Shown in pieces: positions 33,588-37,553 of a DNA stretch of 64,000 nucleotides. This DNA is from Macrostomum lignano. Its lineage: Eukaryota. Both the position numbers and the translations under genes were made by a program. The notes under the pieces are model-generated. The model worked only from the letters and a program-made list of their open reading frames with translations, made no database searches and was not told where the DNA came from. Position 1 is the stretch's first letter; each line of letters opens with the position of its first letter. The DNA is taken from contig NIVC01000303.1 of assembly GCA_002269645.1 (NCBI GenBank), positions 310,001 through 374,000 on the forward strand, in the 5' to 3' direction.

Positions 33588-36500
33588 TCACAAAAACAGA
33601 TTTAAAACATCAAACTCTGAGGCCTGGTCGCTACCAGTTTTGGTCGACGCTTCATCATAGGCTACAGACGCCGCCGCCGGAGAAGTAGCAGCACCGACAC
33701 CGACTCCGCGGCGTTGTCGATTGTCCTCAAGGTAGCCTCGCAGCCGATGTCGACGACTATGCCTACGAGACGAAAAGCTGACGTCGGAAGGGGACGCGGC
33801 GGCGGCTGCTGTTGTAGCGACCACGTCGAGAAAACGTGACATAACGTAACTGTCGTCCACCGAGCCTAAGCCAGGCGGCAGCAACTTTGAAGATGTCGGA
33901 TTTTGTCGTCGACTTTGCATCACGGATTCTAGCCGATGCCGCAGCGACAGCACGGATCGACCGGCGGTGCTGCTAATGCTGGCTGTCTCTGTTTTGTCGT
34001 TGAAATTAGTGGGCGCCGGCTCCGATGACCGGTCAGAAGTCTCCAATTCTGATTTATTGTTATTGTTATTACGAATATCGACCTCGTTTTGATCGACTGA
34101 CTCGACATCGGATTCTGAGTCGGGCAGAGCGGCAGCGGCTACTGGACCCGGCTGTCGCTCATACAGGATGCACAATATCTTGGAGTTCGTAGTTGTCGTT
34201 GGCGGTGTCGCATCTTCGGCGTAGCTGGCAAACCGACTCTCTGATGACATGGCCATCCAGCGCTCGCCTGCGAGTAGTTTGTTAGAGGATTTGCGATTTA
34301 TCGTTTTTTTATTCCAACTAACTAGCATTAAACAAGCGATCTGCAATCAACTGCAAAAGAACTAAATTTAATGATTGTTTTTTAAAGTACTTTTCATGTA
34401 TGTGTATTATTCAATAATTTTATCAAGCGTAATGCACATTCGTTATTATAGACTAAACTGACATCTATCTATCTATCTATTTACCTAACTATCTATCTAT
34501 GTCTATCTATCTGTCTATTTATCTATCTATCTATCTATCTATCTATCTATCTATCTATCTATCTATCTATCTACCTACCTACCTATCTATTTATCTATCT
34601 ACTTATCTATCTATCTATCTATCTATCTATCTATCTATCTATCTATCTATCTATCTACCTACCTATCTATCTATTTATCTATCTACTTATCTATCTATCT
34701 ATCTATCTATCTATCTACCTACCTATCTATCTATCTATCTATCTATCTATCTATCTATCTATCTATCTACCTACCTATCTATCTATTTATCTATCTACTT
34801 ATCTATCTATCTATCTATCTATCTATCTATCTATCTATCTATCTATCTATCTATCTATCTATCTATCTATCTATCTATCTATCTATCTATCTATCTATCT
34901 ATCTATCTATCTATCTATCTATCTATCTATCTATCTATCTATCTATCTATCTATCTATCTATCTATCTATCTATCTATCTATCTATCTATCTATCTATCT
35001 ATCTATCTATCTATCTATCTATTTATCTATCTACCTATCTATTTATCTATCTATCTACCTATCTATCTATTTATCTATCTACTTATCTATCTATCTATCT
35101 ATCTATCTATCTATCTATCTATTTATCTATCAACCTAAATCTTACCAAATCGCACTTACCCGAATACATTACCAAAAACTCCAGCTCCTGATACAAAACC
35201 CTTGTCAAGCCAGCAGGAGTTGACAGAAAAAGTTTGATTAACAAAGCAAAACTTACTAGAACGCGCCGATTCACTTTTGTTCCTCATTTTCCTGTTCCCA
35301 ACAACAGACAGGCAGTTAGGAGGCTGAGACTCACTGTCAGAATTGAACAGCCAGGCAATGTAGTCGAAGCAATCCGCTCCATCCTCGGCAACAGGCTTCG
35401 ATCGTCTCCTTTGCTCAATCATCGCCGTAGGCAGGTACTCGACTCCCGGGGCTGTGCTCAATGAAGTTGAGTGCAATAAACCGCATGATGGCTTCGAGCC
35501 AGCAGCAGCAGCAGCAGCAGACGGAACACCCTCAGGCGATTCCACCAACAGAGCTGGCGGACTGGATTCCCAAGATATTAAAACGCGTTGATTCTCGGCG
35601 CCGCAGCTGCCGCAGGGACGCAGTAGGACTCGCTTCATCGGCTGATTCAAGTCGAAATCGTTGGCTGGATTTGTGAGGCGCAGGACTGAACAGCGGCTCC
35701 TGCGGATCAGGTGGGGTGGGTGGGTGGGTAGGCACTTGGGTTAGCTTTATGGTCGCGTGTGACTGAGGAGGCACTGTCTAATTTATCTTCCTTGTGTTCT
35801 GCCTGCTCCCTCATACTAGTCTGCCCACTCTACCCCACCCAACCTACTCACTCTACCCAACCCAACCTACTTACTCTACCCAACCCAACCTACTCACTCT
35901 ACCCCACCCAACCTACTCACTCTACCCCACCCAACCTACTCACTCTACCCCACCCAACCTACTCACTCTACCCCACCCAACCTACTCACTCTACCCCACC
36001 CAACCTACTCACTCTACCCCACCCAACCTACTCACTCTACCCCACCCAACCTACTCACTCTACCCCACCCAACCTACTCACTCTACCCCACCCAACCTAC
36101 TCACTCTACCCCACCCAACCTACTCACTCTACCCCACCCAACCTACTCACTCTACCCCACACAACCTACTCACTCTACCCCACCCAACCTACTCACTCTA
36201 CCCCACCCAACCTACTCACTCTACCCCACCCAACCTACTCACTCTATCCCACCCAACCTACTCACTCTACCCCACCCAACCTACTCACTCTACCCCACCC
36301 AACCTACTCACTCTATCCCACCCAACCTACTCACTCTACCCCACCCAACCTACTCACTCTACCCCACCCAACCTACTCACTCTACCCCACCCAACCTACT
36401 CACTCTACCCCACCCAACCTACTCACTCTACCCCACCCAACCTACTCACTCTACCCCACCCAACCTACTCACTCTACCCCACCCAACCTACTCACTCTAC

Positions 36501-37553
36501 CCCACCCAACCTACTCACTCTACCCCACCCAACCTACTCACTCTACCCCACCCAACCTACTCACTCTACCCCACCCAACCTACTCACTCTACCCCACCCA
36601 ACCTACTCACTCTACCCCACCCAACCTACTCACTCTACCCCACACAACCTACTCACTCTACCCCACCCAACCTACTCACTCTTCCCCACCCAACCTACTC
36701 ACTCAGTCCACTCCCACCCCAATAATTTCCCCGCACTCTCCTCACCCTAACTGCCCAGAGTGATAACAGACCCTTAAAAAGCGACTCACCTAAAAGTATT
36801 CTGCTCAAAGCAGACCGTACACAACTGCTTAAAACACACTCTAGCCCTGGCGCAATAGCGAAACAGTTTACGCAAACAATTATATAATAAATTTCGCCGG
36901 CCAAGACTGGAACAATCTGCTAATAGACTAGATAACTCGTTGGTTAAGTCGGCATCCAATATAGTTAGCTCTCTATCCACGGCTGCTGACATTGCTGCGT
37001 CAAGTGTTAGCCCGCGAAAATGACAACTTCCACCGTCGCTTTTAAGACTGTCGCTAGTCGACAAACGAAACGACGCTCTCACAGAGCGCAGACAACGCTT
37101 ATAAACAGACAGATGCTTGCGCAATGGGCTGTCGCCGTCTGTAACTCTACAGAACAGGCGGATAGCAGCAGCAGCAGAGGCTAACCCAGGCAATTCGGTC
37201 AGTTGCAATTTGCACCGAACGAATACATCGTCTGGTCCAATAATAACAGTCGACGTAGACGAATTCATTGTTGACGCTATTAAACACGTCACCGCGGTCG
37301 GATCAGCTGGCGGTGGCGACTGCTTGGAGGCAGCTGTAGAAGCAGCCGAGTCTGTAGATAATTCTGTATAGGATCGAGTGACAGGTCGCACAGGCCCTAA
37401 CAAAGGATGCGGACAGTCTGGTCTGTTGCAAGCCTTCACGGCAACTAGCCAGCCGCATTGTAACAAGCGTACACTTGCCCTACCGCAGGTTGGACAGATC
37501 TCCGCCTCTGCACTGTCTCTGTCAGAGTGCAGCGATTGATGCTGATGTAGCAT
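33588..37553 (-). CDS. USPL1: USPL1-like protein (peptidase C98/USP fold), predicted catalytically inactive, 602 aa
   Basis: Exons 37553-36790 (AG|gtgagt), 35699-35335 (A|gtgagt) and 34267-33588 (ctcgcag|GC); phases 2 and 1 match; total 1809 nt. N-terminal CPTC...[14 protein letters not shown] resembles the USPL1 N-terminal Cys cluster. RKLFRY...CTVC...RCSVLRLTN...PCGSCG...[14 protein letters not shown] and [20 protein letters not shown]...KILCILYER align by eye to human KLFLY...CSQC...KSLVTFTN...PCNNC...SPIFMLHFVEGLP and HFITWILDADGSWLECDDL...IHIVIWER. Confidence 0.75.
34463..35130. repeat. (TCTA)n microsatellite, USPL1 intron 2
   Basis: Directly visible. Confidence 0.97.
35826..36704. repeat. 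23-bp minisatellite CCTACTCACTCTACCCCACCCAA, about 38 copies, USPL1 intron 1
   Basis: Directly visible. Confidence 0.97.

What the first reader, a model, noticed from the sequence alone, without database searches (positions are those of the whole stretch)
33588..37553. USPL1-like gene that appears to have lost all three catalytic residues (pseudo-SUMO-isopeptidase)
Seen: a three-exon, stop-free 602-aa product that the ORF track splits into three unrecognised pieces. Using the GTGAGT donor at 35334 gives [11 protein letters not shown]|ERWMAMSSE, which aligns to human HFITWILDADGSWLECDDL with a single-residue gap. Established (from memory): the human triad is Cys236-His456-Asp472, and USPL1 has a catalysis-independent role in Cajal bodies and snRNA transcription. 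Inference: His is replaced by Asp (35365-35363), Asp by Ser (34247-34245), and the ALCWLD Cys box by DDVFVR (about 37232-37215). The structural CxxC pairs and the N-terminal Cys cluster are kept. This suggests an enzyme-dead scaffold in this lineage. I recall a similar loss in flies, so it may be an independent loss.
Basis: partly seen in the sequence, partly recalled or inferred. Interest (0 to 1): 0.8.

Follow-up and report, generated by a model that had tools for sequence, protein, structure and literature searches.

The report
Catalytically dead USPL1-like gene in Macrostomum
This flatworm gene is a distant relative of the human SUMO-removing enzyme USPL1 that keeps the zinc-binding scaffold but lacks the catalytic histidine and aspartate, which fits the idea that USPL1's essential job does not need its enzyme activity.

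Summary
Window 33588-37553 (minus strand) carries a three-exon, GT-AG spliced, stop-free 602-aa gene. Its product is identical to an annotated Macrostomum lignano hypothetical protein.

It is a divergent USPL1 (Peptidase_C98) homologue:
- Pfam C98 is the only protease family hit. The window protein scores below the cutoff, but a 35%-identical relative scores above it.
- Profile-profile alignment to vertebrate USPL1 covers the catalytic domain (E 5e-6) and the USPL1-specific N-terminal zinc finger (E 8e-6).
- A modest AlphaFold model matches human USPL1 structures first.

No histidine in the domain is conserved among the flatworm relatives.

The Cys-box mapping is unresolved.

New here:
- M. 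lignano has a second, old paralogue family (about 33% identical) that also lacks the triad.
- The SUMO-contact residues of human USPL1 are replaced in both families, while the four finger zinc cysteines are kept.
- Both families look selectively maintained (dN/dS about 0.12 and about 0.35).

The most likely reading is a non-catalytic scaffold, probably in snRNA transcription. It is a pseudoenzyme variant of a known family and of moderate interest.

The parts
36790..37553 (-). Exon 1 (aa 1-255, first two bases of codon 255): start ATG at 37553-37551, N-terminal zinc finger, thumb-like helices and the first CxxC
   Evidence: The product is identical to NCBI PAA85815.1.
37395..37505 (-). USPL1-type N-terminal zinc finger, aa 17-53 (CPTC...C...C-x4-C-x-HPL; C20, C23, C33, C42, C47)
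   Evidence: hhalign against vertebrate USPL1 N-termini: Prob 84%, E 8e-6, 37 columns. All five Cys are conserved in paralogue B.
37149..37247 (-). Degenerate Cys-box region, aa 103-135 ([33 protein letters not shown]). The equivalent of Cys236 is not identifiable. Candidates are V110, C114, T119, G123 and C135.
   Evidence: Alignments conflict. pLDDT is below 50. C114 is Thr in paralogue B and C135 is invariant.
36810..36821 (-). First finger CxxC (C245, C248), equivalent to human C361 and C364
35700..36789 (-). Intron 1 (GT...AG), mostly a 23-bp minisatellite (35826-36704, 38 copies)
35335..35699 (-). Exon 2 (aa 255-377): second CxxC, palm strands and the His-box equivalent
35603..35614 (-). 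Second finger CxxC (C284, C287), equivalent to human C397 and C400
35335..35377 (-). His-box equivalent [14 protein letters not shown](S), aa 363-377. Asp367 (35365-35363) sits at the His456 position and Tyr368 at Phe457.
   Evidence: hhalign twice and MAFFT. Coordinates.
34268..35334 (-). Intron 2 (GTGAGT...CAG), mostly a (GATA)n microsatellite (34463-35131, about 167 units). The intron position and phase are shared with paralogue B and with the related species' gene.
33588..34267 (-). Exon 3 (aa 377-602 plus stop at 33590-33588): Asp-box equivalent, last palm strand and low-complexity tail
34239..34259 (-). Asp-box equivalent WMAMSSE, aa 380-386. Ser384 (34247-34245) sits at the Asp472 position.
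34155..34181 (-). Last palm strand KILCILYER (aa 406-414), aligned to human EIHIVIWER. Leu408 sits at the His493 position.
   Evidence: Predicted strand at 406-414.
33591..34151 (-). C-terminal tail (aa 416-602). It is low complexity, with short motifs shared with paralogue B ([21 protein letters not shown]). No Pfam hit.

Best explanation
The gene encodes a divergent member of the USPL1 lineage, a non-peptidase homologue of MEROPS/Pfam family C98, in Macrostomum lignano.

What it keeps: the USPL1-specific N-terminal CPxC...C-x4-C-x-[YH]-P-[LM] zinc finger, and a USP-like domain whose finger subdomain still has its four zinc cysteines.

What it has lost: the general-base histidine (now Asp367), the orienting aspartate (now Ser384), any recognisable Cys box, and the residues human USPL1 uses to grip SUMO2.

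It therefore most likely cannot cleave SUMO and probably does not bind SUMO in the canonical way. It appears to be kept under purifying selection for a non-catalytic role.

By analogy with human USPL1, I infer that it acts as an adaptor or scaffold of the little elongation complex at snRNA genes. Human USPL1's essential Cajal-body and proliferation function is rescued by a catalytically inactive mutant, and it binds ELL and ICE1. The fly protein CG8229 has USPL1 N-terminal homology only and binds Ice1 and Ice2. On this reading the N-terminal finger is the most likely docking module.

Shown: the gene model, homology to USPL1, substitution of His and Asp, retention of the zinc ligands, the existence of a second triad-less paralogue, and signs of purifying selection. 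Inferred: loss of activity, loss of SUMO binding, and the snRNA/LEC role.
For: Gene model:
-. The product is identical to the NCBI annotation.
- Three intact genomic copies.

Family:
- Pfam C98 is the only protease hit: 17.7-18.5 bits for this protein, 20.3 for paralogue B, and 29.4 (above the 27-bit cutoff) for the B-like relative P0003.
- P0003 links to this protein at E 1e-33 over aa 18-378.
- BLASTP against the human catalytic domain: E 1e-4 over the zinc-finger region.
- hhalign: Prob 86%, E 5e-6, collinear over aa 124-418 against human 241-503.
- N-terminal finger: Prob 84%, E 8e-6.
- AlphaFold model (pLDDT 55.8): its four best PDB matches are human USPL1 (E 1e-10, TM 0.61), ahead of USP18, USP35 and USP1.

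Active site:
- H456->D367, F457->Y368, D472->S384.
- No histidine in the domain is conserved between paralogues.
- R324, M330, S332, F335, N398, H421, Y451 and H493 are all replaced.
- C361, C364, C397 and C400 are kept.

Paralogue B (locus L002): I assembled it to 638 aa. It has Tyr and Gly at the His and Asp positions.

Selection:
- B versus its orthologue in a related species: dN 0.20, dS 1.68, dN/dS 0.12.
- A copies: dN/dS 0.33-0.40, 11 synonymous versus 11 non-synonymous changes, binomial p 0.009.

Literature:
- Catalytic triad and SUMO contacts of human USPL1: PMC8983731.
- Non-catalytic essential function: PMC10919355.
- LEC interaction and CG8229: PMC3937775.
Against: - The window protein alone does not reach Pfam's gathering score. 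phmmer does not find human USPL1 in the PDB.
- A flatworm-only profile ranks USPL1 first in the PDB but at E 1.1.
- The only usable AlphaFold model was built with vertebrate USPL1 rows in its alignment, so its resemblance to USPL1 is partly circular. The flatworm-only run failed (pLDDT 33).
- No 3D coordinates were available, so I could not inspect which residues line the active-site cleft.
- Cys114 may coincide with Cys236. Cys135 is invariant and unexplained.
- Alignment confidence is low at several SUMO-contact positions.
- No expression, localisation or interaction data exist for this gene. The LEC role rests entirely on analogy.
- USP53 and USP54 were long annotated as pseudoenzymes and turned out to be active (PMC12037411), although their predicted inactivity did not rest on a missing catalytic His of the kind seen here.
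Confidence: 0.7

Rival explanations
1. It is still an active (iso)peptidase with a rewired or shifted active site. For example, Cys114 or the invariant Cys135 could be the nucleophile, with another residue as base, so the apparent loss would be an artefact of aligning very divergent sequences.
For: - One hhalign run puts Cys114 on Cys236. Cys135 is invariant in both paralogue families and in the related species.
- The related species' B-type protein carries NNHF, identical to the human His-box NNHF, two residues upstream of the Trp-anchored position.
- USP53 and USP54 set a precedent for mis-called pseudoenzymes.
Against: - The A protein has no histidine between H331 and the end of the domain, and none in the domain is conserved between paralogues.
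- The NNHF histidine is Gln in the M. lignano B orthologue and Cys in A, so it is not constrained.
- Cys114 is Thr in B.
- The Asp position is Ser or Gly. Nine SUMO-contact residues are also replaced.
Confidence: 0.07
2. It is a decaying duplicate (pseudogene in progress) of a still-active USPL1 located elsewhere in the M. lignano genome. The substitutions would then reflect relaxed constraint, not a maintained non-catalytic function.
For: - M. lignano carries many recent duplicates; there are three A copies and two B copies here.
- With only about 20 differences between A copies, the selection estimate is weak.
- I could not search the whole genome with a USPL1 profile.
Against: - All three A copies and paralogue B keep intact reading frames and splice sites.
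- dN/dS is 0.12 for B across species and about 0.35 among A copies, with p 0.009.
- A and B are only 33% identical yet collinear along their full length. Conservation is highest in the zinc-bearing fingers (51%) and the N-terminal finger (40%).
- An exhaustive HMMER scan of 1.84 billion representative proteins, and a profile search, found only A- and B-type relatives. The human-domain search found no M. lignano protein.
Confidence: 0.1
3. It is not of USPL1 descent. It would be a divergent member of another USP lineage, or an unrelated zinc-ribbon protein, and the USPL1 match would be driven by the CxxC...CxxC ribbon alone.
For: - The direct pairwise match to human USPL1 covers only the 70-residue zinc region.
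- The window protein's own Pfam score is below threshold.
- The flatworm-only profile is not significant against the PDB.
Against: - hhalign is collinear over about 250 columns, from the thumb helices to the last strand ([16 protein letters not shown]).
- The separate USPL1-specific N-terminal finger matches in the right order.
- Pfam UCH (PF00443) is not hit, while C98 is hit by all three flatworm proteins and passes threshold in one.
- In Foldseek, USPL1 entries outrank all other USPs.
Confidence: 0.08

Closest known systems
Human USPL1 (SUMO-specific isopeptidase, MEROPS C98; PDB 7P99, 7ZJU, 7ZJV)
   Same: - N-terminal CPxC...C-x4-C-x-YPL finger.
- USP-like domain collinear from the thumb helices to the last palm strand.
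- Four finger zinc cysteines.
- Trp460 and the surrounding strand (ITWIL/IAWLF).
- Best Pfam and Foldseek match.
   Different: - His456->Asp, Asp472->Ser, and no recognisable Cys box.
- SUMO2-contact residues R324, M330, S332, F335, N398, H421, Y451, F457 and H493 are all replaced.
- About a 10-residue insertion before the His-box strand.
- 602 aa against about 1,092 aa (human length from my own knowledge).
- No DUF4650 match in the tail.
- About 13-20% identity.
Drosophila CG8229 (partner of Ice1 and Ice2 in the little elongation complex)
   Same: An invertebrate USPL1 relative that cannot be a SUMO protease yet is retained. It points to the N-terminal region as the conserved functional module (PMC3937775).
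   Different: According to the paper, the fly protein lacks the catalytic domain entirely. The flatworm proteins keep the whole USP-like fold and its zinc site and have lost only the chemistry. I did not compare the sequences here.
Pseudo-deubiquitinases with a USP fold (PAN2/USP52, USP39/Sad1)
   Same: A USP fold kept as a binding or scaffolding module after loss of catalytic residues. PAN2's pseudo-UCH module appears among the Foldseek matches (6R9I). The concept is reviewed in PMC10919355.
   Different: These are different USP lineages with different partners (PAN3/poly(A), tri-snRNP). They are pseudoenzymes in all eukaryotes, whereas USPL1 is active in vertebrates and appears to have been inactivated only in particular lineages.
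USP53 / USP54
   Same: USP-family members annotated as inactive from sequence.
   Different: They were shown to be active K63-specific deubiquitinases (PMC12037411). They serve here only as a caution against calling inactivity from sequence.

Membership tests
USPL1 / Pfam Peptidase_C98 (PF15499), homology | Match to the PF15499 profile at or above the gathering score (27 bits) | tested here: inconclusive
   Window protein: 17.7 bits (aa 230-316), or 18.5 bits for the domain alone, E 0.002-0.003. This is below the cutoff but is the only protease family hit. Paralogue B: 20.3 bits. The B-like relative P0003 scores 29.4 bits and passes; it is linked to the window protein at E 1e-33.
USPL1 / Pfam Peptidase_C98 (PF15499), homology | USP right-hand fold (thumb, fingers, palm) collinear with the USPL1 catalytic domain | tested here: met
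   hhalign Prob 86%, E 5e-6, aa 124-418 against human 241-503. AlphaFold model with pLDDT 55.8 and pTM 0.51; the top four Foldseek hits are human USPL1, E 1e-10, TM 0.61. Caveat: the model's alignment contained vertebrate USPL1 rows, and the flatworm-only model failed.
USPL1 / Pfam Peptidase_C98 (PF15499), homology | Four-cysteine zinc site in the fingers (human C361, C364, C397, C400) | tested here: met
   C245, C248, C284 and C287 align to them and are invariant in A, B and P0003.
USPL1 / Pfam Peptidase_C98 (PF15499), homology | USPL1-specific N-terminal zinc finger (CPxC...C-x4-C-x-YPL) upstream of the USP domain | tested here: met
   aa 17-53 against vertebrate USPL1 N-termini: Prob 84%, E 8e-6. 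The MAFFT alignment agrees.
USPL1 / Pfam Peptidase_C98 (PF15499), homology | C-terminal DUF4650 region of vertebrate USPL1 | tested here: not met
   No PF15509 hit at E<=10 for the tail of A or for full-length B.
USPL1 / Pfam Peptidase_C98 (PF15499), homology | Absence of the two USP blocking loops | tested here: inconclusive
   The alignment shows about a 10-residue insertion (aa 353-362) between the strands equivalent to beta8 and beta9, where human USPL1 has no loop. Model confidence is too low to interpret this.
Active SUMO isopeptidase of family C98 | Catalytic cysteine (human Cys236) at the start of helix alpha1 | tested here: inconclusive
pLDDT is below 50 over aa 109-128. C114 is Thr in paralogue B.
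Active SUMO isopeptidase of family C98 | Catalytic histidine (human His456), followed by Phe457 | tested here: not met
   Asp367-Tyr368 in A and Tyr-Tyr in B. The nearest His in A is H331, and no His in the domain is conserved between A and B.
Active SUMO isopeptidase of family C98 | Third triad residue (human Asp472) | tested here: not met
   Ser384 in A and Gly in B. B's exon 3 was read from locus L002.
Active SUMO isopeptidase of family C98 | SUMO2-contact residues reported as conserved in USPL1 orthologues (R324, F335, N398, Y451, F457, H421, H493; PMC8983731) | tested here: not met
   They map to S208 or D213, N225, G285, Q351, Y368, E308 and L408, and are likewise replaced in B. Alignment confidence is low at some of these positions.
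Active SUMO isopeptidase of family C98 | Cleavage of SUMO conjugates or precursors; reaction with SUMO probes | not testable with these tools
   This needs recombinant protein and SUMO-AMC or SUMO-PA assays.
USP-fold pseudoenzymes (pseudo-DUB class) | USP fold retained, catalytic residues missing, gene kept under purifying selection | tested here: met
   Fold and homology. Missing His and Asp. dN/dS 0.12 (B across species) and 0.33-0.40 (A copies, p 0.009).
Little elongation complex / Cajal-body associated USPL1 function | Binding to ICE1/ICE2/ELL; presence at snRNA genes | not testable with these tools
   Known only for human USPL1 and fly CG8229 (PMC3937775).

The most novel reading that the evidence does not exclude
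The USP-like domain is not a dead relic. In this reading it has been repurposed, either with a rewired catalytic centre built around the invariant Cys135 (or Cys114) or as a binding module for a ligand other than SUMO. The two old paralogue families would then represent a new functional class derived from USPL1, not simply an inactive scaffold.
Probability: 0.07. Interest if true: 0.75.

Novelty: new variant of a known kind. Interest (0 to 1): 0.45.

Why it matters
Human USPL1 is essential, yet a catalytically dead mutant rescues the knock-down phenotype. What its SUMO-protease activity is for in vivo is still unclear (PMC10919355).

A lineage in which both USPL1 paralogues keep the fold, the zinc sites and the N-terminal finger, under purifying selection, but have dropped the catalytic His and Asp and the SUMO-gripping residues, is a natural separation-of-function experiment. 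It argues that the conserved, selected function of this family is independent of SUMO. It also points to the N-terminal finger and the zinc-bearing fingers as the parts that matter.

M. lignano supports RNAi and transgenesis (my own knowledge), so the idea can be tested. The result is an incremental addition to the list of pseudo-deubiquitinases and not a new kind of system.

Tried and rejected
- **phmmer against PDB sequences.** Only a chance FIP1 match at E 0.29. USPL1 was not found because the sequences are too divergent.
- **First word-indexed homologue search with the whole protein.** It returned only the protein itself. Masking those words and adding P0003 then revealed paralogue B.
- **Exhaustive representative search.** Only two clusters were found, so no deep alignment could be built.
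- **Human catalytic-domain search.** It returned only short vertebrate isoforms, with no invertebrate or flatworm USPL1. I therefore could not date the loss or test other flatworms.
- **AlphaFold with a flatworm-only alignment.** pLDDT 33, unusable. This was meant as the non-circular structural test.
- **Flatworm-only profile against the PDB.** USPL1 ranks first, but at E 1.1 it ties with a chance 14-3-3 (BMH1) match, so it is not evidence on its own.
- **Resolving the Cys box.** hhalign twice, MAFFT and spacing arguments gave four different answers. I left it open.
- **The NNHF motif of P0003 as a retained catalytic His.** Rejected as evidence of activity, because the M. lignano orthologue has NNQF and paralogue A has ADCF at the same columns.
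- **The 440-aa UniProt model (A0A1I8ITY3, 'USP domain-containing protein').** It skips aa 188-255, using a weak GTCAGC donor inside exon 1, and so removes the first CxxC. I prefer the 602-aa model because it is collinear with paralogue B and with human USPL1.
- **Literature.** I found no paper linking USPL1 to any flatworm.

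
Full report
**1. The observation**

The minus strand of window 33588-37553 holds three ORF pieces: 36786-37553, 35156-35650 and 33588-34346. They join through canonical introns:
- Exon 1 is 37553-36790, with donor G|GTGAGT.
- Exon 2 is 35699-35335, with acceptor CCGCAG| and donor A|GTGAGT at 35334.
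- Exon 3 is 34267-33588, with acceptor CTCGCAG|.

Together they give an 1809-nt frame with a single terminal stop and a 602-aa product.

The product is 100% identical to NCBI PAA85815.1, 'hypothetical protein BOX15_Mlig018531g1' of Macrostomum lignano. This identifies the organism and shows that an independent annotation reached the same model.

A 440-aa UniProt model (A0A1I8ITY3, auto-named 'USP domain-containing protein') skips aa 188-255 and loses the first CxxC. I prefer the 602-aa model because it is collinear with the paralogue and with human USPL1.

Both introns are filled with tandem repeats, which explains the long spurious plus-strand ORFs.

**2. What family it belongs to**

On its own the protein is hard to place:
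- Pfam gives Peptidase_C98 at 17.7 bits, below the cutoff of 27, covering only aa 230-316.
- phmmer against PDB sequences misses USPL1.
- BLASTP against the human catalytic domain aligns only the zinc region, aa 245-314, at E 1e-4. I had verified that human sequence residue by residue against PDB 7P99.

Relatives settle the question:
- An exhaustive HMMER scan of 1.84 billion representative proteins found one other cluster, P0003. It has 374 aa, is 35% identical, and matches at E 1e-33 over aa 18-378.
- P0003 passes the Pfam C98 gathering score on its own, at 29.4 bits.

A profile of the flatworm sequences, compared with a profile of vertebrate USPL1 catalytic domains, gives Prob 86% and E 5e-6. 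The alignment is collinear from aa 124 to 418 against human 241-503. It ends on the last palm strand, ILCILYER against IHIVIWER. An earlier, thinner profile gave the same alignment at E 8.6e-5.

Separately, aa 17-53 align to the vertebrate USPL1 N-terminal finger (YCPACKEKG...LCENPQCIYPLG) with Prob 84% and E 8e-6.

An AlphaFold model built on a mixed flatworm and vertebrate alignment is of modest quality (pLDDT 55.8, pTM 0.51). Its four best PDB matches are human USPL1 (7P99, 7ZJU, 7ZJV; E about 1e-10, TM 0.61), ahead of USP18, USP35 and USP1.

This structural result is partly circular, because vertebrate USPL1 rows were in the alignment. The flatworm-only control run failed (pLDDT 33). A flatworm-only profile ranks USPL1 first in the PDB, but at E 1.1.

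Taken together, two USPL1-specific modules in the right order, with C98 as the only Pfam protease family ever hit, make USPL1 descent well supported.

**3. The catalytic residues**

The human triad is Cys236-His456-Asp472, and Phe457 is conserved in all orthologues (PMC8983731).

Both hhalign runs and MAFFT place Asp367-Tyr368 on His456-Phe457 and Ser384 on Asp472, with one extra residue in the turn.

The loss of the histidine does not depend on alignment details:
- Within the USP-like domain, protein A has histidines only at 147, 178 and 331.
- No histidine in the domain is conserved between the flatworm paralogues.

The Cys box is a different matter. Cys236 lands on Cys114 in one hhalign run (low confidence) and on Cys135 in MAFFT. 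It lands on Thr119 or Gly123 if the better hhalign alignment is extended or the spacing to the conserved Tyr151 is used. The model is below pLDDT 50 across aa 109-128.

Cys114 is Thr in the paralogue, while Cys135 is invariant everywhere. I therefore treat the loss of the nucleophile as likely but not shown.

Beyond the triad, the SUMO-contact residues that Li et al. report as conserved and functionally important are all replaced. These are R324, F335, N398, Y451 and F457, together with the tail contacts M330, S332, H421 and H493. They map to S/D, N, G, Q, Y, R, L, E and L respectively. The four finger zinc cysteines (C361, C364, C397, C400) map to C245, C248, C284 and C287 and are kept. Some of these positions sit in low-confidence stretches of the alignment.

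**4. A second paralogue family**

A profile search with low-complexity words masked found two more M. lignano proteins, P0049 and P0050 ('partial' hypothetical proteins). They are close to P0003 and 27% identical to the window protein by BLASTP.

I read their locus, L002 (NIVC01000837.1). The annotated models stop by reading into an intron whose position and phase are the same as intron 2 of the window gene. Adding the downstream exon gives a complete 638-aa protein, which I call paralogue B.

Paralogue B is collinear with A along its full length at 33% identity. Shared features include the N-terminal finger, the zinc cysteines, the RWM motif after the splice site and two short motifs in the tail. 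At the triad positions B has Tyr (in NNQFYYVIW) and Gly, and it has Thr where A has Cys114. So the one paralogue I could find is also triad-less.

P0003 comes from a 1.2-kb genomic contig of an unidentified related species (Logan, SRR28338165). It is B-like (74% identical) and lacks the two introns that M. lignano B has in this stretch. It reads NNHF where M. lignano B reads NNQF. That His is therefore not constrained.

**5. Is the gene maintained?**

- **Paralogue B.** Between M. lignano and the related species, dN is 0.20 and dS is 1.68 (near saturation), giving dN/dS of 0.12.
- **Paralogue A.** The three copies (this window, L003, L004) are all intact and share the same exon structure. They differ by 4-22 substitutions, with dN/dS 0.33-0.40. 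The most divergent pair has 11 synonymous and 11 non-synonymous changes, against about 448 synonymous and 1358 non-synonymous sites (binomial p 0.009).
- **Between A and B.** Conservation is highest in the fingers (51%) and the N-terminal finger (40%).

This argues against simple decay. The evidence for A is thin because the copies are so recent.

**6. How it most likely works**

*Shown:* it is a USPL1 homologue that keeps its zinc scaffolds but lacks the general base and the third triad residue, and it exists as two selectively maintained paralogue families.

*Established knowledge:*
- A papain-type Cys/His/Asp protease cannot work without the histidine.
- The Cajal-body and proliferation phenotype of human USPL1 depletion is rescued by a catalytically inactive mutant (Schulz et al. 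2012, as summarised in PMC10919355).
- USPL1 binds the LEC components ELL and ICE1 and is needed for RNA polymerase II occupancy at snRNA genes (PMC3937775).
- Drosophila CG8229 resembles only the USPL1 N-terminus, lacks a catalytic domain, and was found with Ice1 and Ice2 (PMC3937775).

*Inference:* the flatworm proteins perform the ancestral non-catalytic job, probably as LEC-associated adaptors in snRNA transcription. The N-terminal finger would be the docking module, and the USP-like domain a structural or protein-binding body that no longer recognises SUMO.

I put about 0.7 on 'catalytically inactive, maintained USPL1 homologue' and perhaps 0.4 on the specific LEC/snRNA role.

**7. Comparison and novelty**

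- **Membership.** It is a homologue of family C98. It does not meet the defining features of an active C98 peptidase, because His and Asp were tested and are not met. The right label is non-peptidase homologue, or pseudo-isopeptidase.
- **Closest cases.** The nearest functional analogies are fly CG8229, which lost the domain where this protein lost only the chemistry, and the USP-fold pseudoenzymes PAN2 and USP39. USP53 and USP54, once called pseudoenzymes and now known to be active (PMC12037411), are a reminder that inactivity inferred from sequence needs an assay.
- **Literature.** I found no paper connecting USPL1 with any flatworm.
- **Verdict.** This is a new variant of a known kind and of moderate interest. 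It gives evolutionary support to the SUMO-independent function of USPL1, in an animal where the idea can be tested.

**8. Limits**

- I could not obtain invertebrate USPL1 sequences, so I could not say when the loss happened or whether other flatworms share it.
- I could not search the whole M. lignano genome for an intact copy.
- I had no model coordinates with which to inspect the cleft.
- There are no expression data for this gene.

Noticed in passing
L002 10004-15519 (NIVC01000837.1, M. lignano): This is a second USPL1-like paralogue family (B). The annotated proteins P0049 and P0050 are truncated by read-through into an intron. Adding the exon that starts at 14729 gives a complete 638-aa, four-exon gene that also lacks the triad.
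   Followed up: yes
L001 1-1223 (Logan SRR28338165): This is a B-type gene from an unidentified related species. It has no introns where M. lignano B has two, but has the same donor at the shared intron position. It carries NNHF, identical to the human His-box motif, where M. lignano B has NNQF. I did not identify the species, and the missing 3' exon was not found.
   Followed up: partly
window 35826-36704: A 23-bp minisatellite (38 copies, 98% matches) fills intron 1. It creates 318-334-aa spurious ORFs on the plus strand (35759-36763).
   Followed up: partly
window 34463-35131: A (GATA/ATCT)n microsatellite of about 167 units fills most of intron 2. It creates a 230-aa spurious plus-strand ORF.
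   Followed up: partly
window 32500-33419 and 37739-38410: The gene is flanked by minisatellites. Downstream is a 19-bp unit (about 51 copies, with a 326-bp higher-order period). Upstream, starting about 190 bp from the start codon, is a 28-bp unit (24 copies). The whole window is unusually rich in such arrays, for example 162-1013, 2010-3528, 16694-17523, 21360-22556, 41822-42532 and 50487-52724.
   Followed up: no
window 37149-37151 (Cys135): This cysteine at the end of the helix after the degenerate Cys box is invariant in all A copies, in B and in the related species. It has no counterpart among the known functional residues of human USPL1.
   Followed up: partly
window 33588-37553 versus UniProt A0A1I8ITY3: An alternative 440-aa public model of this gene starts at Met96 and splices out aa 188-255 through a weak GTCAGC donor inside exon 1. 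It carries a Ser176->Ile difference and so probably derives from another copy.
   Followed up: partly
window 1853-4123 (-), 5005-5706 (-): These are exons of a WD40-repeat gene (Pfam WD40, E 2e-21). One ORF runs straight through a long CT/GT-rich repeat that translates as (CLSV)n.
   Followed up: partly
window 29099-29956 (+) and 27975-29387 (+): A C2H2 zinc-finger gene lies upstream on the opposite strand (Pfam zf-C2H2, E 9e-6). The adjacent 470-aa ORF has C2H2-like motifs by eye but no Pfam hit.
   Followed up: partly
window 58471-59169 (+): An exon encodes the end of a calpain catalytic domain (Pfam Peptidase_C2, E 2e-25). The ORF then runs into a CT/GT-rich repeat.
   Followed up: partly
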